A DNA stretch of 64,000 nt, taken from positions 141,298,001-141,362,000 of the forward strand of contig NC_067401.1 in the NCBI RefSeq assembly GCF_016432865.1, in the 5' to 3' direction. Positions 1 to 62,571 of the stretch are shown piece by piece. The DNA is from Antechinus flavipes (Eukaryota). Each line of letters starts with the position of its first letter. Within the stretch, counting starts at the first letter, position 1. The notes beneath the pieces are model-generated. The model was given only the letters and a program-made list of their open reading frames with translations. It had not been told where the DNA came from and did not search any database. The translations under genes were made by a program, and so were the position numbers.

Positions 1-478
1 GTAAAAGTGTATTTTCTAAACATTTATTTACCTTTGTGGAAGACACTAGGTGACAACTAGGTGGGTCAGTGTATAGAGTTCTGAGTCTGCAGTCAGGAAA
101 ACCTAAGTTCAAATGTGGCTTCAGATACTTACTATCTATGTGATTGAAGAAATCATTTAACCTGTGTTACACATACTGATGATACTACTACAAATGATAT
201 TAATTATATTGAAATAGTTAACAAAAATTTTTTCTTTAAGTTTATGGACCCCAGGTTAAGAATACTCCCTGCTCCAAACCTAATTCTGCCATGGCTTTAA
301 GGTAACATCTTCTGCTAAGCCCTTGTGTGGAGATTGCCTTTGTGAACTTTGAGAATGATCTGTCTGTCCCTTGGTTATTCTGGAGTTGTGAGGTCATGGG
401 AACACTGTTTTGTGCTTTTTGTTTTTATGGGGGAGGGAGGAAGAAAAAGGGAAGAAAGAGGGGTGGGTTGTTAGGGAT

Positions 479-1903
479 TTATGTAGCAAATAGCTAGGAA
501 TTTAAGTGGAACTTTCAAGGCTGATCTCCCCCACCCCCAACCATGTTATCAGAAGGCTGGTTGAAATTAAACCAATGAATTCAATTCAGAATATATGAGT
601 GGACATTCCAGCCCTGCTTGGAAGGATTCTAAGATATCCTAAGGAGACCAGTCTCTTTTTGGAACTGTATCATAATAGATTTCAGACCTAGAAAAGGTCT
701 TAGACCTAGTTAAATCTAGATAGACTATGTTAGAAAGAACAATCAGGCAAAAAGTGCAAGTTTTTTTCAAGAGATACTTTGAATAACTGAATTTTATCTG
801 AATTCGTATATTCTCTGTTTCCTCCCATTTTGTTGTTGTTGAGTTCATGATCTCATGAACCATATTGTTTATGGGATTTTCTTGGCACTTTATTGAAGTA
901 GTTTGCCATTTCCTTCTTCAGTGGGCCACATTTGAACTTAGGTCTTCCAGCATCCTATCTACTGAGACATCTAGCTGCCTGTTTTCTTCCATAAAGGTAA
1001 ATAAACTTTTAGAAAACACATTTTTGTGTGTGAATACATAGAATAGAAGCAAAGGGAGAACAGATTCCAGACTTGGACATCCATTTATGGTGGCCACAGT
1101 AAAGGAAGAAAGAGATTATTATGGGACTCCAGATCTCTAAAACAAGCGAGCTCAAGGGGCTGGAAGAAGGCTTAGTGACCAGTGAAAGCACACAAAGCAA
1201 TGAAAGGTGAACAGTTTGAGTTCCCAAAAGTTAAATTTCCCACGATTTGATGCAAGAAGAAAAAGAGGCCAGAATCATTAGAGTGTTGAATAAAATGATG
1301 AAGGCCTAAAGCCCAGGGCTGGATCTTTCACAACCCATCGCTTCTCCCCAAGGATGTACCCTCCCCCAATCTTGAGTACCACCCTCATCCCCCCAAAAAA
1401 ACCCTTTTTATCTTTTTGCTTCTCCCCACTTGATGAGAAAAACCCAAACTCTTCCTTCTGTTGCTTCCCCAAAGTCCTTCCTTTCAACAAAACCTCAGGT
1501 GACCTCAATAGCTGTGGACCAAAGGAGATATTTTCCCCCCAAAACATCATAAGGATATAAGAGGAGGAAAGGGTCCCTTTCATTTTTTCTGGGCCCATTC
1601 CCTCATCTGTAAAATGAAATCCTTTCAAGCTCAAAATCTCTGATCTAAAGATTCTTTCCTCCTCCTGTGTCCCATTCCCCAATAATAGCCACCTAGATTT
1701 CCTATGTAATCCTTTTTATAGAATAAATTATGTAGCAAATAGCTAGGAATTTAAGTGGAATTTTCAAGGCTGATCTCCCCCACCCCCAATCATGTTATCA
1801 GAAGGCTGGCTGAAATTAAACTAGTGAATTCCCAATGAGTTTAATTCAGAATATATGAGTAGACATTCCAGCCCTGCTTGGAAGGATTCTAAGATAGCCT
1901 AAG
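479..1903 (+). repeat. Dispersed direct repeat of about 165 bp (479-643 and 1728-1903)
   Basis: Aligned by eye: 7 substitutions plus one 11-nt indel. Confidence 0.85.
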
Positions 1904-3667
1904 AAAATTAGCTCAGCAATCTCCTCCATCAGACCCCAGAAGGAAAAATGTTGTCTTTGTGACCCTTGGAGATTCTCTGTGTATCTCTTGAATATCCATA
2001 TAATAGAAACATTTGTGCCATTTCTTTTATATTTCCTTCTTTTTTTCATTCTTAGAATAAATAGTTTTAGTGGTAGTTGGGCTGGGGATGGGAGAAGAAA
2101 CGAGAAAAATGTTAGAACATTCAAACACCATCAAACATGCAATCAGACATGGCAGCTAAGTGGTGCCATTGAGTGCTGGATTGGCATTTAGAAAGAACTG
2201 AGTTCAAATTCAGAGTCAGATGTTTGCAGTTGTGTGAGCCTAGGTAAGCCACTTAATCCCTGTCTGCTTCATCTGTTTCCTCATCCATAGAGCAGGGATA
2301 GAAATAGCACCTATCTCCCAGATTTGCTGTAAGGACCAAAGGAGATAATATTTGAAAAGTACTTTGCAAATCTTAAAAACATTATGTAAATGGTAGCTAT
2401 TATTGAGAATAAACTTTGGATTATAGAATATAGTCCAATAAACCTAATTTAGAGCATTCAACTGAGCAAATCCCAAATCTGCATGAGGGTATTCTGGGGT
2501 GGAAGAGGCTCCATGGGCTGGACATTATGGTACTCCAGACCCTGGGTCATGGTTTGAAAACTTAAATACCACTGAACTGGGGGGCTATGTTGTTTTCTTC
2601 TAGATTAACGGTTCTTAAACCTGAAATGTGTAAATTTAAAAATTGGGTTATTTTTATGTGTATTTCAATAAAATTGGCTTCCTTTGTAAGCCTATGTAAT
2701 TAGTGTTCTTAAAAACATAATTCTGAGAAAAGGTGTATAGGCTTTACCAGATTGCCCAAGGGGTCCATAATACAAAAAAGGTTAAGAATCCCAGGGAGAG
2801 AGCAGCTAATTGGCTCCGTGGATAGATCACAAGTTCTGAAGTCAGGAGGACCTTAGTTCAAATCTGGCCTCAGACACTTAACATTCCCTGGTTGTGTGAC
2901 CCTGGGCAAGTCACTTATATTGCCTCAGGAAAAAAAAAATACCAGGGAAGTAGCCAGGATGAAAGGGAAAAAAAAGAACAAAAAAACAGCCTATAAGGAA
3001 GCAAAGGAAATGTGGACATTCATGGATATAATCTTCTTTACTATTATATATCCTTTCTTGAACTGGTAATTTATTACTATATATTTTGATTCCTCCCTGA
3101 TGTTCTTCTGGGCACATGACAATGTTTTCTTCTGTTCTGTTTTATTTTCTTTTTTTGTTTTTCTTTTTTCTACTTTTTAAAAATACATTTCTTAAAAGAA
3201 TCACTAAGTTATGATTTCATATGTGTAATGATATGTTACTTTGCCTCTTCAGTATGAGAAGGAAGAAGAGAATTTGGAACTCAGTTTTAAAAAAAAAAAT
3301 CCCTATATTAGATGTAGTTATAATAACTTCAGTTGTCTTTCAGTTGTCTTCTACTCTTCATGACCCCATTTAGGATTTGCTTGGCAAAGATAGTGGAATG
3401 GTTTACCATTTCCTTTTTCAGCTCATTTTACAGATGAGGAAACAGAACTAAATAAGGTTAAATAATGGGCTCAAGGTTACAGGGCTGATAATTGTCTGAA
3501 GCCAAATTTGAACTGGGGAAGATGAGGCTTCCTGACTTTGGAGCTGGCACCCTAACCACTGCACCACCCAGCTGCCCAATAGCTATTGTTTATGAAATTA
3601 TGTGTTCCCTGTTGCTCCATTCACCCTTTCTCCCCAAGGCTTTTTGACCTTGAGGGCACCCCCAAAC

Positions 3668-3772
3668 CTTAAATTCACTTTCTTTGTCCTCATCAGGCAG
3701 ATCAGACTGAACTTCTTTTTTCTGATGAACATTTTGTTTCTTGGCTTTCACTAAAATCTTGCCTTTCAGCTG
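3668..3772 (-). CDS. PLCD3: PLCD3 exon 9 (end of X box and X-Y linker); last PLCD3 exon visible in the window
   Basis: Acceptor ctccacag|CAG (NAGNAG), 105 nt, encodes QLKGKILVKAKKQNVHQKKEVQSDLPDEDKESEFK. Donor GTTTGG. I found no Y-box exon in 1-3667. Confidence 0.9.
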
Positions 3773-4083
3773 CTGTGGAGTCAAGAGAGAAGTGTCAGTC
3801 CTTCCTCCCTTCTCTGTCCCTTCTCTTACTTGGCTCCCCCAATACAGTCAAGCTCCTTCTAGTCTCCCAAATCTCATCTCCCCATTGTTCAGGGAACTCT
3901 TCTCTGTCAGCCTTGCTTTCACTAAAATCTTGCCTTTCAGCTGCTGTGGAGTCAAGAGAGAAGTGTCAGTCCTTCCTCCCTTCTCTGTCCCTTCTCTTAC
4001 TTGGCTCCCCCAATACAGTCAAGCTCCTTCTAGTCTCCCAAATCTCATCTCCCCATTGTTCAGGGAACTCTTCTCTGTCAGCC
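3744..4083. repeat. Perfect tandem duplication (169 bp, period 171) spanning the exon 9 acceptor
   Basis: 3744-3912 and 3915-4083 read identical by eye. The duplicated peptides in the 3741..4346 and 3775..4104 ORFs confirm it. Confidence 0.95.
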
Positions 4084-4254
4084 AAGATCTCTCTCCCCTC
4101 TTAGAATACCTAGTTTTTATTGTCTGTCCTACCCTATTAGAATCTCCCAAGTACAGAGCTGAAGGAGGAGTGTGCCCTCACACGGGGAGCAGCCTTCCTC
4201 CTCCTCATCCCTTCCCCATCCCCATTCCCCAAGCCAGCCCTGTGTGGACATCAC

Positions 4255-4407
4255 CTCTGGAGAGGGCAGTTCCTTGGGAATTTTCCCATCTAGAGTTTCA
4301 GTCACCAGCATGTTCCCCAGGATGGTCCGTAGGTAGTGGGCCATAGTGGACTGCTGCTCCATCCCACAGTGATTTTCCAGGGACAAGATGACAGGGTAGG
4401 GAGATTG
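4255..4407 (-). CDS. PLCD3: PLCD3 exon 8 (X box)
   Basis: Acceptor ccaccag, 153 nt, encodes [51 protein letters not shown]. Donor GTGATG. Confidence 0.96.
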
Positions 4408-5652
4408 CTGGTGGAGGGGAGTAGGTAGATACCCAGGATCAGGGCTCTGTTCCAGCCTCAGGCTGAGTCCTATCCCACTCAGGACAAAGAGGGTAGGGGA
4501 AAGTGGGCAATCCAGATTGAATGGGAGTCAGAAACGACTTACCACCCATGGAACCTCTTGAAAGCCTGTTTCTGATTCGTAAAAACAGGAGGATTGAACT
4601 AGATAGTTCTGAGTTTCCTTCCAACTCTGTAACTATGATTATTTGGCATTCAAGGCTCTTCTTAACACACCAGTCCCCTTACTGAACTTTGGTACAGATA
4701 AGAGTGCTGGAAGACCTGAGTTTGAATCCTGCTATGTGACTCTGGGCAAGTCAGCTAGCCCCTCCTGTCTGCCTCAGTTTCCCCTCTGTAATATGAAGGA
4801 ATTGAACTTGTTGGCCTCTAAATCTGTGACTTTGTGAATTGCATTGGTCTACTTACTGTTCCTCATACATAAGACTAATCTCTAGTTTCTACATCTCGCC
4901 TCCATATCTAAAATGCCCCCTTCCTCATCTCTTAGGAGCCCTGACTTCCTTCAAGATTTAGCCTAAGTTCCGTTCTTCCGTTTGAAGCCTTTCCTGGTCA
5001 TATACCACCCCTCAAATATTAGTACCTTCCCCTCTAAAGTTGTCTTGTATCTACTTAGTAGATAGCTATTATATGTACATATTGTATTTCCCATTGGAAT
5101 GTAAGCTCTTTGAGGGTTTTCTTTCATTCCTTCTCTTTTCCTTCTTCCTCATTCTTCCTTTCTTTTCTTTTTTTTTCTTTTTTTTTTTTTTTACTATTTA
5201 CTATACTAATTTAATATACACTAATGTATTATTTACTATTTCTTTGTATCCTCAGCATTTAGCACAATGCCTGGTATATAGTAGGTGCTTAATAAATGCT
5301 TCTTGAATGATATAGAAGGTGCTTAATAAATGATGATTGATTGATCCTAATTCTATGAATTAATTAGCAGGATCCTTTAAATTCTGCTCCAACCCAAAAA
5401 TAGGGGATCATGATAGGCTTTGGGTCGTTGGATGGATTTTTGGACTTTGAGGAGTTGAGGGGGAGGGCTTGCCACGGTGGCTGGATGTCGTGGGGAAGGA
5501 TAGGTGAGGTAGAAGGAAGAAGGCTGAGGGCGCCCAGGAGAAGGAGAGGAAGTCGGGGGCAGGTCACCGTGGGAGTCTTGGGGGCAGGTTGAGGGATAGG
5601 AAGGCTCGGCTTGGCACAAGGTGGGATGAGACGGGGCAGGGCAGGGGCTCAC

Positions 5653-8540: not shown

Positions 8541-11307
8541 GATTTAGCAATAGTAATGAGAATAATAAGGATTACCATTTAATAAGGATAATTAAAGGAT
8601 TGTTGCGAAGTTCAAATGAGATATTTATAAAGCACCTTAAAGCACTATATAAATGTTATAGATAACAGTTTTTATATACTGTAAATATTATCACAGGCAG
8701 CTAGGAGGTACACTGAGAGGGAACTGGGCTAGAATCAGGAAGACCAGAGTTCAAATTTGATCTCAAACACTTACCACCTGTATGAACTTGGGCAAGTCAC
8801 TTAAACTCTGCCTCCTCATTTTCCTTATCTATAAAATGAGGATATAACAGTACCTACTTCCCTGGATTGTTGGGAAGATAAAATGAGAAAACTATTTGCA
8901 ACGATCTTTGTAAGCCTTTTAAAATGCTCTATAATTTATAGCTATTATTATTGATTATTAATCTGTATGAAGAAATTGAGATTTAATGGCTTACCCCAGA
9001 TCACAGGGGCAGAGGGAAAAGGGACTCCGAAGGCAGATTTCTTTTTGTCTTCATGTCCAGAATCTATGCACCACACCAGAATTTTTAATTCTTTTTTCAT
9101 GTCAGGGACTCTTTTAGTAAGCTGATAAGCCAAGGGACCACCCCTTCTCACAAATGTATAAAATAAAATCCATTGTATTACAAAGGATACCAATTATACT
9201 GACATTTTTTATTTAAACAAGTTCATGAAGGGTAATAGCTAGGTGGCCCAGTGGATAGAGTCACCAGTTCTGGAGTCAACAGGACCTGAATTCAAATCCA
9301 ACCTCAGATAAGAACTAACTGTATGACTCTGGGCAAATGTCTTAAACCCAATTGCCTCAAAACAAACAAACAAAAAGCAAGTTAATTTAACCCTCCAAAT
9401 TAAATGCTCCTCTATTATAGCATGAATTCATAGCCCTACATACCATTATGGTATGGTGTGTGTTATGTTCTATACGAGTTTAAATGGAAAGAGTCTACTG
9501 TGTATTCACACAAGCAATACAGGTATGGTACCTGTGTGATGTGGATCAATGTCGTAGCCACACATGATCTCTTGTGCTAATTTAGCTGAATTTAGCAAAC
9601 CATCCTTCAGGTCCCTTACCCTCTTTGGATTAGAGATCTAGGAGGAGGGAAGCTGGAGAGGAAGGAGGAATCCAAGTTTGGATTTTATGATCCCTAGAGG
9701 CATGAAAAAGGAAGCATAATGTCCACCTCCTGAGAGGTGATGCTACAGAATAAAACATATTTCTTTTTGGACATGATCAGTGCAGAAATTTGTTTTGCTG
9801 GATGATGTAGATTTTTTTACAAGGATGGTTTTTTTTTTTCTTTTGTTTTTCATGGGGAATAGAATGTGGTAAGGAGGTGAAAATAGATTTTTATTCATTC
9901 AAAAAATTAATTTTTCATTAATTAAAATCAATTTTAATTAATTTTTGCTCCTATTGAAGATGATAGGAAGAAAAATCAGATTTTTATTTTGTTTTGCTGG
10001 ATGCTGTAGATTTTTACAAGGGTGTTTTTTTCTTTTGTTTTTCATGGGAAATAGAAGGTGGTAAGGGGGTGAACATAGATTTTTATTCATTCAGAAAATT
10101 AATTTTTTTCAATGTAGCCACATAAAAGCAAAAACAAAAAAACAAAACCCCAGACTTTGAGTGTCTTGATCTGGAGAGCTTCCTCTGCTTTCTTGCAGGA
10201 TAAAATGCAGGACTTTTAAATTCCCCTTATGTCCCCACCCTGGCCTGACTTAACCTGACAGCTAAGGTAACGAGTCCCAGATGTTGCTAGCTCTAGAGAG
10301 AGGAACCAGCTCTCTCAATAACAACAGTTGAGCTCAAGGGGCTTGGGAGGGAGGTAGTAGGGATGAGTCAGCCAATTCTCCAGAAAAAGGAATAGAGGTG
10401 GATAAATTGCTTGACTAGGAGGCAGAAGTACTGGGTTCTAGTACCAGTTCTGCCACTTTTCTATTCTGACCAAGTGCCTCAGTTTCCCCTTCCGTAATAT
10501 GAGGGAGGTTAGATGCCAAGGTCCTTTCCATCTTTGAATGTCATTTTATTGAGTTAATCAAGGAAGTGAATAGGGACAATTCTGAGTAGGCTATTCTCTA
10601 GCATCAGGGACCCTCTGCTTAAAGCACAGATTGAGGAGCAGCTAGATGGCACAATGGACAGAGTCAGGAGTCAAGAGTTCAAATATGAACTCAGAAATGT
10701 ATTAACTGTTTGACACTGGACAAATCATTTAACCCAAGTGTTTCAAAAAACAAACAAACCCTTAGACAGAGGAAGGTGAGGGAAAGGGTGAAAGAAAAGG
10801 CCCAAAGGAGGAACCCGAAGGGATGGGTTCACATGCCTAAACATGGCTGATCTCAAGGGTTGGGCTTGCTTAATTCTTGAATGGGAGAAAAGAAATCTAA
10901 ATCTGTCTGCATTTGAATCCCGCCTCTGCTATGTATCAACTTTGTGACCTTGGACAAGCCACTTGATAGTGATGTGCCTCAGTTTCCTTATCTGTAAAAT
11001 GAAGTGATTGGATTAAATGTCCTCTAAGATCCCTTCTTGCTCTAAAATCTATAAGCCTATAATCTTATGATAGGAGTAGGTGGTCTGAGTGCTGACAGGC
11101 AGGGGGTAGCAGGGCTGAGTTTAAGGACTGAGGAATTCCATTAGGCTCAGTTAGAGAATAGGAGCTAATAAATAAAGTCACAGAACAGAGGGGCCCAGAG
11201 AATGAAAAAAAAAAGAAGAGGGAGGGTTCCAGAAAAAGGGATGAAGAAAAGCAAAATGGTGTCCGATTGGGAAACGGGGTAGAGGCTGAATGAGGAAGGG
11301 GGGGTAC

Positions 11308-33529: not shown

Positions 33530-34510
33530 CCTTAGAAACCAAGAAACTTTTTCCCAAAATAATAATAGTACATAATAGGAGGAGGAGGAGGACCCTTAAA
33601 AACCAAGAATCCTTTTTTCCAAGATAATTATAATAGAAGTAATAGATAATATTAGTAGTAGCTCCCTTAGAAACCAAGAAACCTTTTTCCAGTAAAGAAT
33701 AATCATAGTAGTAGTATTCCCATTAGAAACCAAGAAACCTTCTCCCAGAATAATAATAGTAGGTGGTAGTAGTAGTAGCCTTAAAAACCAAAAAGTCTTT
33801 TTCCAAAATAATAATAATAATAATAATAGTAGTAGTAGTAGTAGTAGTAGGACCCTTAAAAATCAAGAAGCCTTTTTTTCCAAGATAATAATCATAGTAG
33901 TAGTATTCCCATTAGAAACCAAGAAACCTTCTCCCAGAATAATAATAGTAAGTAATAGTAGCAGGAGTAGTAGGACCCTTAAAAACCAAGAAGTCTTTTT
34001 CCAAAATAATAATAATAATAATAATAATAGTATTAGGTAATAGTAGTAGTAGTCCCATTACAAACCAAAAAACGTTTTCCCCTGGGTAATAATGATAGTA
34101 TTCATAGTATTAGTAGTCCCCTTTAGAAAACAAGAAAACTTTTTCCAGGATAATAATAATAGTAGTAGTCCCCTTAGAAACTAAGAAAACTTTTTTCCAG
34201 GATAATAATAACAATAATAGTAGTAGTAGGCAGTAATAGTAATAGTAGTCCTCTTAAAAAGAAGGATTCTTAAAAAGAATCCAGGCTATTATTTCCAGGA
34301 TGATAATAATAGTAGTAGTAGTATTAGTCCCTTTAGAAACCAAGGAAACTTTTTCTAGAATAATAATAGTAGTAGTAGGCGTAGGTAATACTAGTAATAG
34401 TCTCCTTAAAATCCAAGAATCTGTTTTCCATGATGATAATAGTAATAGTAGTAGGTAATATTAGTGAAATCCCATTAGAAACCAAGAAATCTTTTCCCCT
34501 GGATAACAAT
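33530..34510. repeat. Compound minisatellite: about 15 units of a roughly 28-bp core plus variable (TAA)n(TAG)n spacers
   Basis: Core CCCTTAGAAACCAAGAAACTTTTTCCA recurs every 50-80 bp. Confidence 0.92.
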
Positions 34511-37500
34511 AGTATCAGCAACAGCTAACATTTATATAGCCTTATTAAGGTTAGCAATGCACTTTTCATATTATTTCATTTGATCATCATACCAACCCTG
34601 AGAGACTTTTTACAGATGAGGAAACTGAGACTAAGAGATCACATTCATAAATGCCTGAGGCACAGTATTCAAACTCAGGTCTCCCTGATTCCAATACTGT
34701 CCATGTACCATGTAACTGCCTCTGAATTTAAAACTTGGAGCTAGGACATCTGGGTTCTCGTCCTGGCCCAGCCTCTCCAGTGCCTTCAGGGACCCAGGCT
34801 TCTCTTCTCAGGGATCTTGCTCCCAGTATTGTAGTTCAGAGCATTCCAGCAACTGGTTTCTAGGATCTTTTACCATGGCTGCCCTTTCTTTTGTGCTTCC
34901 TCAATCTAGAAAGTGAGACTGGCCTGGGAACAGGAGGAAGGCCAGCAGAAGTAGACCCTTCCTTTGGGGCAGCAAAGCTGACTCCCCCAGCCCTCTTCTT
35001 GTGGCAGCTGCTCCCCTAAAGCTGAATGGTTCTAATTGCTGCCCCCCACCCCCACCCCCGCCACTCTGCTCTCACCCCCTCATCTTCAGTGGTCCTGTCT
35101 GACATTTATTCCTTCTTCACCACACTCACACGCAGGCAGATGTCCAGAGGTGTATATATAGACTATGTGGTTCACATGTTTCAGGACTGTTGGCTCTTCG
35201 TGAACCTGTTTGGCGTTTTCTTGGCAAAGATAACTAGAGTGCTCTTTCCTTCTCCAGCTCATATTACAGACGAGGAAACTGAGGCAAATGGGATTGAGTG
35301 ACTTGCCCAAGGTCACATAGCTAATGAGTGTTTCAGGCCAGATTTGGATTGACTCCAGGATGGGAGCTTTATCCACTTGCACCACTTAGCTGCAAACACA
35401 CACACACACTCTGTGTCTCTCTCCCTCTGTGTGTCTTTCTGTGTCTCTGTTGTTTGTCTGTCTGTCTCTCGCTCCGTGTGTGTGTGTGTGTATGTGTCAG
35501 AAGACTGCGGAAGAAATGTCAGCCTGTAGGCAGGCCCAATCTAGCCAAGTCTGGCCCTTAGAAAGTTCTCAAGTGGGCATTGGCTAAGTTTAGGGAGTGG
35601 CGGGGACTCCTGGGGGTCTACCCTGTGTCTCTGCTGGCTCATTATGATGGATGGCATGTTTTACATGTCGGAAACCCTTGAGTTCTTATTCTTACCTTTC
35701 CTACCAGAAGGGAAACTCTAGACTTTGGGTACAGTCAGATGGAGGCAGGGAGGTGGCTCAGAGAGGCCTGCACCTGGGGTCAAGAAGGCGCCAGCCTCGG
35801 ACCCTCACTCACCAGGAGGCAAGTTAGCCTTCATCCACTGGAGAAGCAAATGGCAAATCACTCCCGAATCTTTGCCAAGAAGTAGATAGCTTCTAACCTT
35901 CAGCCATGGGGACACAGGAAAGGACCTGGAAATATAGGGCCTGGCTTTCTAAATCTTACTTCTTCCTCCCTCCTACCCTGGACTGTCATCTTCCCTGAGA
36001 TGTGGGGGCTAGGCCTGAGGGTGTTTGGGGAAAAGATATAACCTAGGCTCACAGCACTGTGGAGGTGGGGGCAGGGCCTCTCTCTGATTCAGTGAGTCTC
36101 CAACCTGGTCCAGTGAGTCTATTTTTCCAATCTCTCACACTAGCTGGTATTTCAGTTATGTTTGAGTCAAGAAACATTTTAAGTGCACAATGATTGTAAA
36201 ACCTTTTGCTGGGTACTGACTGTAGAAGATGTAAATCTATGAAAAGATACCATTCTTACCTTCACAGAGCTTATATTCTTCAGTTTGGTACTATGCCACT
36301 CGTTAGCTGGGTGACCCCATCTGTACAGATTTGTAGGAGAAAGTGACAAGATTACTACTTCCATACTATAAGGATTTGTGTCTAATAAAAAGGGTTCTTA
36401 ATTTTTTTTTTTTTTACATTATGGTGACCCCTGTAGACCCCTTCTCAGAAGAATGTTTTTAAATGCACAAAATACCTAGAATTACAAAGAAACCAATTCT
36501 ACTGAAAATAGTGATCAAGATATTAAAAAAAACAAACAAGTTTTTGGAGTCCAAGTTAAGTGCTCTTAGTCTAAAATTTAGTGAGTTCTCTTTAAATCTT
36601 GCTGTAGCCCCATAGGTCATAGTTCAGTAATTGGTGACCTACTGCATAAGGACAATTATCTCTGAACTAGCCAGGCTGGTTCAGGCAATGGGCAAACAGC
36701 CTTTTTAATGCACTAGAAGGCCACCCACATAAAAACCAAGAGCCCACAGTCCTTTTAGCTCATGATCAGGTATGGCTTTAATGGATGATGACATATATCC
36801 AAATCACAATCATTCATTATAGGTATACAGCAGTGCTTGGGGAGTGTGGAGGAAGTCAAGGGTGATACAGACGGGGAGATCAGGGAAGGCTTCCTGGAGA
36901 GGGTGGCCCCTGAGCTGGGCCTTTAATGGATTTGAAAGGGATGGTGGTGTGGAAGAGGGAGGGATATTCTAGTTTTAGATAATGGTCTTTGCTGAGGCAT
37001 GGTGAGGAAGGCATTGTCCTTTGGGCCCAGATTGCCTCTCCCTTGGAACCAGTCCAGAGGCGGCCTACCTGTGGCCCTGGAGCTTCCCCTCCTTCCCGGT
37101 GAACCTCGGGTGTTGAATGGATAGAATGCCAGCCTGGAGTCAGGAAGACCTGAGTTCCAAAATTTGCCCTTAGATGCTTCCTAGCTTCAGGGGTTAGACA
37201 AGTCACTTTACCCTGTTTACCTCAGTTTCCTCATCTATAAAATGAGCTGGAAAAGGAAATGGCAAACCACTGCAGTACCTCCACCAAGAAAACTCCAAAT
37301 GGGGTCACAAACTCATTCACTTCTGAACATTATCCCTTGATTGACATAAGGACCACCCCTGCATTAGCACCCATCTCAACTGATCCTCCATCACTGCTAC
37401 GGGGTTTTGCTCCCTAAATCTAATGCTCATTTCCTCTGCTTTCACCCCAAAGTATGTAAATTTTTCTTAATGGTATATAAGGACCTGAGTTTAGGCTGAA

Positions 37501-49042: not shown

Positions 49043-50104
49043 ATGGCTGAGCCATTTCTGTCTCAATGTCAGCAGCAGCAACAGACTTCTCAAACTTCTT
49101 CCAACTGTACAGGTGCTATGGGCAGAGCGGAGCGTTATACTGAGCCCCCCGGGGAGGACTGTAGGTGGCAATCGAGAGCTTCTGAACTTGATGCGATCCT
49201 TGAGAAAGAGGAGAGAGGGGAGAATCCAGCCCCAGCCTCCCCTCCCAGGGCAACTGTGGCGTGCCTAGACCCCGGCTGCCCAGATGGGGGCGAGAAGGGC
49301 CCGAACCACGACGATCTGACAGCTGTCGGGGCTGCTGCCGCACCGCCGTTGGGTGAGGGGCCAAGGCCCAGAGCCCAGCCTCCGCAGTCGTGCCAAGGTT
49401 ATGGGGGCGACAAGTTTGCAGTTCCTATCGGGGAAGAAGAGGAGGCCTGGCGGCAGCAGCAAAGACAGCTGGGGAAGAAGAAGCATAGGAGACGGCCTTC
49501 CAAGAAGAAGCGGCACTGGAAGCCTTACTACAAGCTGACTTGGGAGGAGAAGAAGAAGTTCGACGAGAAGCAGAGCCAGCGGGCATCCCGGGTTCGAGCC
49601 GAGATGTTTGCCAAAGGACAACCGGTCGCCCCTTACAACACGACCCAGTTCCTGATGGATGACCATGATCAGGAGGAGCCGGACCTGAAAACTGGCCTCT
49701 ACTCCAAACGGGCGGTGGCCAAGTCGGACGATACAAGTGATGAGGACTTCTTGGAGGAGGCGGGAGAAGAGGATGGGGGCAGTGATGGGATGGGGGGGGA
49801 CGGAAGTGAGTTTCTCCAGAGGGATTTCTCCGAGACCTATGAACGGTACCATGCGGAGAGCCTCCAGAACATGAGCAAGCAGGAATTGATCAAAGAATAC
49901 ATGGAGCTGGAGAAGTGTCTCTCCAGGATGGAGGATGAGAACAACCGGCTGCGGTTGGAGTGCAAGAAGTTTGGGGAGGACTCCCGGGTAAGAGAACTAG
50001 AGTTGGAGCTGGATCGGCTAAAAGCTGAGAATCTCCAGTTGGTGAAAGAGAACGAACTGCACAGACAGCAGGAGAGAGCGCCTCTTTCCAAGTTTGGAGA
50101 CTAG
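49043..50104 (+). CDS. HEXIM1: HEXIM1 (7SK-binding P-TEFb inhibitor), intronless, 353 aa
   Basis: MAEPFLS start, basic ARM KKKHRRRPSKKKRHWKPY, PYNTTQFLM motif, acidic tract, C-terminal coiled coil ending SKFGD. Confidence 0.99.
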   Translation: MAEPFLSQCQQQQQTSQTSSNCTGAMGRAERYTEPPGEDCRWQSRASELDAILEKEERGENPAPASPPRATVACLDPGCPDGGEKGPNHDDLTAVGAAAAPPLGEGPRPRAQPPQSCQGYGGDKFAVPIGEEEEAWRQQQRQLGKKKHRRRPSKKKRHWKPYYKLTWEEKKKFDEKQSQRASRVRAEMFAKGQPVAPYNTTQFLMDDHDQEEPDLKTGLYSKRAVAKSDDTSDEDFLEEAGEEDGGSDGMGGDGSEFLQRDFSETYERYHAESLQNMSKQELIKEYMELEKCLSRMEDENNRLRLECKKFGEDSRVRELELELDRLKAENLQLVKENELHRQQERAPLSKFGD

Positions 50105-61767: not shown

Positions 61768-62571
61768 AACTCTGGGAACCCCTTCAGCCCCAGTATACCA
61801 CCTGAGCCCCCTGACTCTGGTGGCTGTCGGCTCCTGACCCCTGGGATGGATAGCCCATCAGAATGGAAAGAGCCGGCAAAACCCAGCAATGGCAGCAATG
61901 AATCGAATGGAACATCCCAAGCCAAGAGCCCAGATTGTGGCTCTGCTGAGGCATTGGGTCGAAGGAAGCACAGGCGGAGGTCCTCAAAACGCAAAAGGCA
62001 TGGATGGCGGCCCTACCTGGAACTGAGCTGGGCCGAGAAGCAGCAAAGAGATGAGCAGCAGAGCCAGCGGGCCTCCAGGGTTCGAGAGGAGATGTTTGCC
62101 AAGGGGCAGGCTGTAGCACCCTACAATACCACTCAGTTCCTGATGGATGACCATGACCTTGAGGAGCCAGACCTAGGGAACCCCCAGGGAGCCCCCCACC
62201 AGGGTTCTGGATGGGAGGAGGAAGATGGGGGGACTGGGGACATTGATGGGAGAGGGAAAGCTCAGGGAGAGTTTCTCCAGAGAGACTTCTCAGAAACCTA
62301 TGAGCACTACCACGTAGAGAGCCTGCAGGGCCGGAGTAAGCAGGAACTGGTGCGGGACTACTTGGAGCTGGAGAAGCGGCTTTCGCGAGCCGAGGAGGAG
62401 ACACGGAGGCTGCAGCAGCAGCGGAACCCCCTGGGCCCGCACCCCTGTGAGCGGGCCCAGGAACTGGCAGCTGAAGTGGAACGCCTGAAGATGGAGAACC
62501 AGAGGCTTCGCCGGGAGAATGAGATGTGGGGCCGAGAAGGCAATGGACCTGGAGAGAACCCAGGCTCCTAA
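61768..62571 (+). CDS. HEXIM2: HEXIM2 last exon coding region (first AUG at 61846 gives 241 aa; frame is open from the acceptor at 61768)
   Basis: KHRRRSSKRKRH ARM, RPYLELSWAEKQQRDE, PYNTTQFLM and SKQELVRDYLELEKRL are HEXIM2-diagnostic. Acceptor tttctccttaatcttag. Confidence 0.97.
   Translation, partial: NSGNPFSPSIPPEPPDSGGCRLLTPGMDSPSEWKEPAKPSNGSNESNGTSQAKSPDCGSAEALGRRKHRRRSSKRKRHGWRPYLELSWAEKQQRDEQQSQRASRVREEMFAKGQAVAPYNTTQFLMDDHDLEEPDLGNPQGAPHQGSGWEEEDGGTGDIDGRGKAQGEFLQRDFSETYEHYHVESLQGRSKQELVRDYLELEKRLSRAEEETRRLQQQRNPLGPHPCERAQELAAEVERLKMENQRLRRENEMWGREGNGPGENPGS

What the first reader, a model, noticed from the sequence alone, without database searches (positions are those of the whole stretch)
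3739..4087. Perfect 171-bp-period duplication copies the PLCD3 exon 9 splice acceptor and creates a poison 3' splice site
The duplicated unit holds the whole 3' end of intron 8 plus the first 29 nt of exon 9. Two identical acceptors therefore exist, at 3943 and 3772 on the minus strand. The period is a multiple of 3, but use of the upstream acceptor reads QLKGKILVKARLTEKSSLNNGEMRFGRLEGA and hits TGA at 3850-3848. That truncates the enzyme before the Y box, a likely NMD target. The duplicated region is bounded by an 8-bp inverted repeat (TCTTGGCT at 3739-3746, AGCCAAGA at 4080-4087), which suggests hairpin-assisted slippage. Full identity means a very recent or polymorphic allele, or an assembly error. 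If real, it could be a hypomorphic PLCD3 allele.
Basis: partly seen in the sequence, partly recalled or inferred. Interest (0 to 1): 0.7.

Follow-up and report, generated by a model that had tools for sequence, protein, structure and literature searches.

The report
Doubled PLCD3 splice acceptor, unverified by reads
In this marsupial assembly a 171-base stretch across the intron 8 / exon 9 boundary of the signalling-enzyme gene PLCD3 is written twice, which gives the gene a second, identical splice acceptor that would yield a truncated message if used; I could get no reads, so I cannot say whether the doubling is real or whether the cell uses the extra acceptor.

Summary
The window has two exact 169-bp copies (3744-3912 and 3915-4083) joined by 2 extra bases, so the period is 171.

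On the minus strand each copy carries the last 140 nt of intron 8 and the first 29 nt of exon 9 of a PLC-delta gene. I call it PLCD3 because HEXIM1 and HEXIM2 lie next to it. Each copy therefore has the same branch-point candidates, pyrimidine tract and CAG|CAG acceptor.

- **Upstream acceptor (3943):** splicing here reads 31 codons and then hits TGA at 3850-3848, about 180 nt before the exon 9 donor. That geometry should trigger NMD.
- **Downstream acceptor (3772):** splicing here keeps the normal frame.
- **Inverted repeat:** the 8-bp repeat sits across both breakpoints. This is rarer than chance (0.17% of equally spaced position pairs in this window).

So neither the reality of the duplication, nor its frequency, nor acceptor usage was tested.

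My reading: a real, young tandem duplication creating a partly used decoy acceptor (about 0.4); an assembly artefact (about 0.3); real but silent in splicing (about 0.25). This is a known kind of event and of modest interest. The scan noted this same stretch once before.

The parts
4255..4386 (-). PLCD3 exon 8 (end of the catalytic X box). Its last base is 4255 and the donor is CCAGAG|GTGATG. The 5' limit is approximate.
   Evidence: Pfam PI-PLC-X, E 9.7e-09, on ORF 4129-4386; donor read.
3915..4083 (-). Upstream copy in transcript order: 140 nt of intron 8 (4083-3944) plus a 29-nt copy of the start of exon 9 (3943-3915).
   Evidence: 100% identical to 3744-3912.
3913..3914 (-). 2-nt junction scar ('AA' on the minus strand) between the copies. 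It matches neither flank.
   Evidence: the match run stops at 3912 and resumes at 3915.
3744..3912 (-). Downstream copy: 140 nt of intron (3912-3773) plus the first 29 nt of the authentic exon 9 (3772-3744).
3944..3969 (-). Decoy 3' splice-site module. It is a 26-nt AG-free zone with branch-point candidates CTGAC (A at 3966) and TTGAC (A at 3952), a tract that is 80% pyrimidine, and a CAG|CAG (NAGNAG) acceptor. The first exon base would be 3943.
3773..3798 (-). Authentic 3' splice-site module, letter for letter the same as the decoy (branch A candidates at 3795 and 3781). The first exon base is 3772.
3848..3850 (-). In-frame TGA, reached 31 codons after the upstream acceptor. It lies 180 nt upstream of the exon 9 donor at 3668.
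3668..3772 (-). Exon 9 (X-Y linker): 105 nt, phase 0, donor AAG|GTTTGG. A second donor-like site, AAA|GTGAAT, would end the exon at 3679. The choice cannot be settled because exon 10 lies outside the window.
   Evidence: No Y-box frame in 1-3590.
3739..3746 (.). Arm 1 of the 8-bp inverted repeat (TCTTGGCT on the + strand), lying across the low-coordinate breakpoint.
   Evidence: I17.
4080..4087 (.). Arm 2 of the inverted repeat (AGCCAAGA on the + strand), lying across the high-coordinate breakpoint.
   Evidence: I17.
3824..3832 (-). Donor-like CAA|GTAAGA (7 of 9 consensus positions; first intron base 3829), 57 nt upstream of the authentic acceptor. Its twin sits 171 nt upstream, with first intron base 4000. 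Paired with the decoy acceptor it could define a 114-nt pseudo-exon that still contains the TGA.

Best explanation
This is a real, young tandem duplication in the sequenced animal: 169 bp copied head to tail with a 2-nt repair scar. It spans the last 140 nt of PLCD3 intron 8 and the first 29 nt of exon 9.

The duplication places a complete second 3' splice-site module (branch point, pyrimidine tract, CAG|CAG) 171 nt upstream of the authentic one.
- Transcripts that splice exon 8 to the downstream acceptor (3772) are normal.
- Transcripts that splice to the upstream one (3943) carry a 276-nt exon 9 with a TGA after 31 codons. They would encode PH-EF-X only, with no Y box and no C2 domain, and should be removed by nonsense-mediated decay.

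The expected net effect is a partial loss of productive PLCD3 mRNA from this allele, probably with little or no phenotype.

Shown: the sequence anatomy. Inferred: that the DNA is real, that the decoy is used, that NMD acts, and the size of the effect.
For: - **Repeat anatomy:** exact 169-bp copies plus a 2-nt scar.
- **Splice signals:** identical in both copies, with a private 26-nt AG-free zone holding two branch-point candidates, so each acceptor is self-sufficient.
- **Accessibility:** predicted RNA accessibility of the two modules is about equal, unpaired probability 0.245 against 0.213. Nothing in the core signals favours the authentic site.
- **Stop codon:** it lies 180 nt before the next exon junction.
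- **Gene identity:**
- **For a biological origin rather than an artefact:**
  - The junction carries a small non-templated scar, as end-joining leaves.
  - The same 8-mer lies on opposite strands exactly across both breakpoints (0.17% by chance) and pairs with probability 0.36-0.54 in the folded one-copy strand. An assembler has no reason to break there.
  - There is no gap between the copies and no difference between them, so two marks of false duplications listed in PMC9516828 are absent.
  - An older tandem duplication (spacing 192-199 bp, 76-94% identity) lies in intron 4 of the same gene, so duplications of this size do arise here.
Against: - No read, contig or transcript evidence was obtained.
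- Perfect identity of the copies is also what short-read polishing of a falsely doubled stretch would give.
- If the earlier notes of this scan are right that this is the yellow-footed antechinus reference, it was built from PacBio continuous long reads with wtdbg2 and polished with Pilon using 100-bp reads (PMC9290055). Those reads cannot span a 171-bp repeat.
- Other perfect duplications touching exons of conserved genes are noted in the same genome. That pattern fits errors that are blind to selection.
- The inverted-repeat statistic was computed after the repeat was seen.
- Which of two identical acceptors wins cannot be predicted from sequence alone.
Confidence: 0.4

Rival explanations
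1. It is an assembly artefact. The animal has one copy, and the long-read consensus or the short-read polishing step wrote the 169 bp twice. The 2 odd bases would be an unpolished seam. Nothing would happen to PLCD3 splicing.
For: - The copies are 100% identical.
- A junction with 2 unexplained bases is what an unpolished seam would look like.
- The assembly method reported for the genome named by earlier notes is continuous long reads, wtdbg2 and Pilon with 100-bp reads.
- Several other perfect young duplications hitting exons are noted in this genome.
- False exon gains from duplication errors are well documented (PMC9516828).
Against: - There is no gap between the copies and no differing letters between them, unlike the common haplotype-derived (heterotype) false duplications.
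- The breakpoints fall inside an 8-bp inverted repeat (0.17% by chance), which an artefact would not seek out.
- This is the only perfect tandem array in the 64 kb.
- Read depth and spanning reads, the deciding marks, were not testable.
Confidence: 0.3
2. The duplication is real but silent in splicing. The spliceosome uses only the downstream acceptor, which is backed by the full exon 9 and its donor. The upstream copy would simply lengthen intron 8 from 311 to 482 nt, a neutral insertion that may be fixed in the species.
For: - The upstream copy keeps only 29 nt of exon. After that comes intron-derived sequence with G-runs (2 in the next 70 nt, against 0 in the true exon), which usually mark introns.
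- The authentic acceptor lies 105 nt from a donor, the ideal exon-definition distance. The decoy lies 276 nt away.
- PLCD3 is otherwise intact in every exon seen.
- Zero differences in 169 bp allows an age of up to a few million years, long enough for fixation.
Against: - Core signals are identical and predicted accessibility is about equal.
- The upstream site is nearer to the exon 8 donor and is transcribed first.
- The sequence after the decoy is as purine-rich (0.69) as the real exon (0.67), so it may act as an enhancer.
- A 276-nt exon is still within the range of exon definition.
Confidence: 0.25

Closest known systems
Small intragenic tandem duplications across an intron-exon boundary that double a 3' splice site (reported as human disease alleles, for example a short duplication at an intron/exon junction of HEXB; from my memory, not checked here)
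   Same: The intron end and exon start are copied head to tail, giving two identical acceptors in series. The outcome depends on which one is chosen.
   Different: This one is 171 bp rather than tens of bp, so each copy has its own branch point. Use of the upstream site gives a stop rather than an in-frame insertion. It is seen only in one assembly, and no RNA data were obtained.
Unproductive splicing coupled to NMD (poison exons and poison splice sites)
   Same: An alternative acceptor introduces a premature stop more than 50-55 nt upstream of an exon junction.
   Different: Known regulatory cases are conserved and used in a regulated way. This one would be a young accident with no sign of conservation, and its use has not been shown.
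NAGNAG tandem acceptors
   Same: Two acceptors in tandem compete. Each copy here is itself a CAG|CAG NAGNAG site.
   Different: NAGNAG sites are 3 nt apart, share one branch point and add or drop one residue. The duplicated modules here are 171 nt apart and each is complete.
False duplications and false exon gains in genome assemblies (PMC9516828)
   Same: A doubled stretch touching an exon in a non-phased long-read assembly of a heterozygous species.
   Different: Two of that paper's listed marks are absent: there is no gap between the copies and no differing k-mers. Depth and read-pair marks could not be tested. The scale here (171 bp) is far below the cases described there.
Plcd3 mNab, a spontaneous hypomorphic mouse allele caused by an IAP insertion in intron 2 (PMC3378570)
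   Same: An intronic insertion in the same gene that diverts splicing and lowers the output of normal protein.
   Different: The mouse allele is a retroelement insertion giving an N-terminally truncated protein, and it was shown experimentally. Here the change is a local duplication with a predicted C-terminal truncation and NMD, untested.
Intron origin or sliding by tandem duplication (PMC2891723, listed; only the title and abstract were seen)
   Same: A tandem duplication of a gene segment doubles splice signals and can redraw exon-intron borders.
   Different: That model doubles exonic AGGT to make a new intron. Here an existing acceptor is doubled and no new coding arrangement results.

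Membership tests
PLC-delta / PLCD3 orthologue | EF-hand-like domain followed by the catalytic X box, in order, on one strand | tested here: met
   Pfam EF-hand_10, EF-hand_like and PI-PLC-X across five minus-strand exon-bearing ORFs between 4.1 and 11.5 kb.
PLC-delta / PLCD3 orthologue | Closest solved relative is a delta isozyme | tested here: met
   PLC delta-1 (1qas, 1djg) is the top hit for two exon-bearing ORFs, E 2e-22 and 1e-20. For the second it is well ahead of all other isozymes; for the first only narrowly ahead of gamma (1e-21).
PLC-delta / PLCD3 orthologue | Y box and C2 domain downstream of the linker | not testable with these tools
   No Y-box-like frame in 1-3590. These exons lie beyond the window's end.
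PLC-delta / PLCD3 orthologue | Synteny with HEXIM1 and HEXIM2, which tells PLCD3 from PLCD1 and PLCD4 | tested here: met
   Two HEXIM ORFs at 49043-50104 and 61846-62571 (Pfam HEXIM, E 5e-61 and 1e-47). The gene order at the human locus is from my memory.
Genuine tandem duplication (structural variant) | Adjacent head-to-tail copies with a definable junction | tested here: met
   169 + 2 + 169 bases.
Genuine tandem duplication (structural variant) | Independent reads or contigs that contain the junction or span both copies | not testable with these tools
A protein search with the 201-aa ORF that spans both copies found nothing.
Poison 3' splice site (splicing coupled to NMD) | A competent acceptor: branch point, pyrimidine tract, AG | tested here: met
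   Identical to the authentic site over -140 to +29.
Poison 3' splice site (splicing coupled to NMD) | Premature stop more than 50-55 nt upstream of a downstream exon junction | tested here: met
   TGA at 3850-3848 is 180 nt before the exon 9 donor at 3668.
Poison 3' splice site (splicing coupled to NMD) | The site is used in RNA, and the isoform rises when NMD is blocked | not testable with these tools
   No reads could be laid.
False duplication (assembly error), marks of PMC9516828 | Gap between the duplicated pair | tested here: not met
   No N anywhere in the window.
False duplication (assembly error), marks of PMC9516828 | Haplotype-specific differences between the copies (heterotype) | tested here: not met
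   169 of 169 identical. The homotype kind is not excluded by this.
False duplication (assembly error), marks of PMC9516828 | Half or low read depth and discordant pairs over the copies | not testable with these tools

The most novel reading that the evidence does not exclude
The duplication is real and fixed (or common) in this antechinus lineage, and the upstream acceptor takes a large share of splicing. PLCD3 would then run as a natural, constitutive knock-down through unproductive splicing. This would be a freshly born poison splice site caught before any decay. Its breakpoints in one 8-mer on opposite strands would also point to a specific origin: paired nicks with fill-in, or a stem that brings the two ends together.
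Probability: 0.1. Interest if true: 0.45.

Novelty: new member of a known kind. Interest (0 to 1): 0.25.

Why it matters
- **If real and used:** it would be a clean natural example of how one small duplication creates a competing splice site and an NMD-targeted isoform in a conserved signalling enzyme. It would also give a natural competition between two identical acceptors, a way to ask what beyond the core signals decides the choice.
- **Expected effect on the animal:** probably small. Loss of Plcd3 alone has no apparent phenotype in mice, though it worsens Plcd1 loss (PMC3378570).
- **If an artefact:** it matters as a warning. The same genome has other perfect duplications touching exons, and one read-level audit would settle all of them together.

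Tried and rejected
- **Reads:** I asked read laying for window 3300-4700 on runs X1, X2, X7 and X9.
- **Reads, second attempt:** I sent a stretch beside those places, as the tool's message suggested. That second call went over a stated cap and I should not have sent it.
- Only local scans of the whole window were run (Tandem Repeats Finder, and my own scripts including a local blastn).
- **The look-up of encoding contigs:** I tried it with HEXIM1 to find other assemblies.
- **The search for homologous proteins:** I searched with the 201-aa plus-strand ORF that runs through both copies, hoping for ORFs called on other contigs with one or two copies. There were no hits, and this says nothing either way.
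- **Run table:** coded organism A holds 0.72-0.87 of the sampled words, B 0.59, C 0.50 and D-F about 0.27. Only about 2% of the words cross the junction, so these shares cannot tell one copy from two.
- **Literature:** searches for a general rule on duplicated acceptors gave nothing usable.
- **RNA accessibility:** it does not separate the two acceptors.
- **Left unused:**
  - The big representative protein search, because the protein family is not in doubt.
  - A metagenome DNA scan, because a hit was very unlikely and a conserved-exon pattern risked pulling in human-like contigs.
- **Rejected readings:**
  - A transposable-element origin: the unit has no other copy in the window.
  - An in-frame 57-residue insertion: the frame meets a stop.
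  - Rescue by splicing from the donor-like site at 3829 to 3772: that intron would be only 57 nt.
- **Not done:** Exons were searched one by one, by reference.

Full report
**What is in the sequence**

Tandem Repeats Finder reports one array at 3744-4083, period 171, two copies, 100% matches. A base-by-base comparison at offset 171 shows 169 consecutive matches, 3744-3912 against 3915-4083. The two bases between the copies (3913-3914, 'AA' on the minus strand) match neither flank.

So the event is 169 bp doubled plus a 2-nt scar. It can equally be described as 171 bp with one mismatch at the edge, or 172 bp with a 1-nt loss. The unit has no other copy in the 64 kb, and this is the only perfect tandem array in the window.

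**Which gene**

On the minus strand, five exon-bearing ORFs between 4.1 and 11.5 kb carry Pfam EF-hand_10, EF-hand_like and PI-PLC-X in the right order. PH-domain-like exons lie at 12.6-13.7 kb (by eye). The best solved relative of two exon-bearing ORFs is PLC delta-1: clearly for one, and only narrowly ahead of gamma for the other.

Two HEXIM genes lie at 49-50 kb and 62 kb. That matches the neighbourhood of human PLCD3 as I remember it, so PLCD3 is the right name.

I see eight coding exons from the PH domain to the linker. No Y-box-like frame lies in 1-3590, so the Y and C2 exons are beyond the window.

**Anatomy of the junction**

- Exon 8 ends ..CCAGAG at 4255, in phase 0.
- Each copy holds 140 nt of intron 8 and the first 29 nt of exon 9.
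- Each copy has a 26-nt AG-free zone with two branch-point candidates (CTGAC with its A at -23, TTGAC with its A at -9), a tract that is 80% pyrimidine, and a CAG|CAG acceptor. So each acceptor is a complete module.
- The downstream acceptor (first exon base 3772) opens the 105-nt linker exon, which ends AAG|GTTTGG at 3668. A second donor-like site would end the exon at 3679.
- The upstream acceptor (3943) reads 31 codons and then TGA at 3850-3848, 180 nt before the exon 9 donor. This fits the rule for nonsense-mediated decay.
- A donor-like CAA|GTAAGA lies 57 nt upstream of each acceptor. Paired with the decoy acceptor it could define a 114-nt pseudo-exon. That pseudo-exon still holds the TGA, and the remaining 57-nt intron is too short to splice well.

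Every route through the upstream acceptor is therefore unproductive. The protein would stop after the X box.

**Which acceptor would win**

The core signals are identical. Predicted unpaired probability of the branch-to-AG stretch is 0.245 for the upstream copy and 0.213 for the downstream copy.

- **Favouring the upstream site:** it is nearer the exon 8 donor, it is transcribed first, and it is followed by sequence as purine-rich (0.69) as the real exon (0.67).
- **Favouring the downstream site:** it has the full exon and a donor at 105 nt. The sequence after the decoy has two G-runs, which are typical of introns.

I cannot predict the ratio. I could not find a usable general rule in the held literature.

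**The inverted repeat**

TCTTGGCT (3739-3746) and its reverse complement (4080-4087) lie across the two breakpoints. I rebuilt the one-copy form in a script for statistics only. An inverted repeat of 8 bp or more straddling both ends of a 169-bp segment occurs at 0.17% of positions in this window. In a single-strand DNA fold of the one-copy form, the eight pairs have probabilities of 0.36-0.54, and they close the minimum-energy structure on the plus strand.

Two readings fit:
- a stem that brings the segment ends together;
- the same motif nicked on opposite strands, giving about 170 nt of 5' overhang that is filled in and rejoined with a small scar.

Neither was tested. An assembler would have no reason to break at such a repeat, so I take it as weak support for a biological event.

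**Real or artefact**

Earlier notes of this scan name the genome as the yellow-footed antechinus reference. I did not test that. If it is right, the assembly came from about 100x PacBio continuous long reads, corrected with canu, assembled with wtdbg2 and polished with Pilon using 100-bp reads. The species is reported as highly heterozygous (PMC9290055).

Polishing a falsely doubled stretch would make the copies identical, and 100-bp reads cannot span the repeat. The same genome has other perfect duplications touching exons of conserved genes, which would fit errors that are blind to selection.

Against an artefact:
- There is no gap between the copies and no difference between them, two marks of false duplications in PMC9516828.
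- The breakpoints sit in an inverted repeat.
- An older tandem duplication of similar size (spacing 192-199 bp, 76-94% identity) lies in intron 4 of the same gene.

**What I could not do**

- The look-up of sequencing runs listed good holders.
It went over a stated cap and I should not have sent it.
- A protein search with the ORF that spans both copies found nothing.

So no read, contig or transcript evidence bears on this finding. I built and searched no joined exon model.

**Age**

Zero differences in 169 aligned bases only bounds the age. With a neutral rate of 1-2.5 x 10^-9 per site per year (my own figure), the chance of no difference falls below 5% after roughly 3.5-9 million years. The duplication could be a private allele, a polymorphism or a fixed species-level insertion.

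From the word shares, the coded organisms differ from the window by very roughly 0.5% (A), 1.7% (B), 2.2% (C) and 4% (D-F). Missing contigs also lower these shares.

**Verdict**

| Reading | My odds |
|---|---|
| Real duplication with a partly used decoy acceptor | 0.4 |
| Assembly artefact | 0.3 |
| Real but silent in splicing | 0.25 |

Even in the first case the effect on the animal is probably small, since Plcd3 loss alone has no apparent phenotype in mice (PMC3378570). This is a new instance of a known kind of event, and its interest is modest until reads are laid.

Noticed in passing
window 3941-3946 and 3770-3775 (minus strand): Each copy of the acceptor is a CAG|CAG (NAGNAG) site. The exon 8/9 joint could therefore gain or lose one glutamine, whatever the status of the duplication.
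   Followed up: no
window 9789-10107: An older tandem duplication in PLCD3 intron 4: 9789-9915 against 9988-10107, spacing 192-199 bp, 76-94% identity. Duplications of this size arise naturally at this locus.
   Followed up: partly
window 33532-34514: An AT-rich minisatellite block with nested periods of 52-189 bp and 75-89% matches, lying between PLCD3 and HEXIM1.
   Followed up: no
window 49043-50104 and 61846-62571 (+): Intact single-exon HEXIM1 and HEXIM2 ORFs (Pfam HEXIM, E 5e-61 and 1e-47). I used them only as synteny markers.
   Followed up: partly
I left them alone and worked beside them.
   Followed up: no
same genome, other windows (earlier notes s1-204748, s1-215354, s1-200962): The same genome has several other perfect or young duplications touching exons or splice sites of conserved genes (STOML2 exon 9, a JNK2 donor, a receptor exon). 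As a class they call for one read-level audit of the assembly.
   Followed up: no
run table (coded runs X2, X4, X7, X8): Four small runs (89-224 million letters of contigs) hold as much of this mostly intronic 1.4-kb stretch as the genome-sized runs of the same studies. If they are RNA runs, unspliced or intron-retaining PLCD3 RNA is well represented and could show acceptor use.
   Followed up: no
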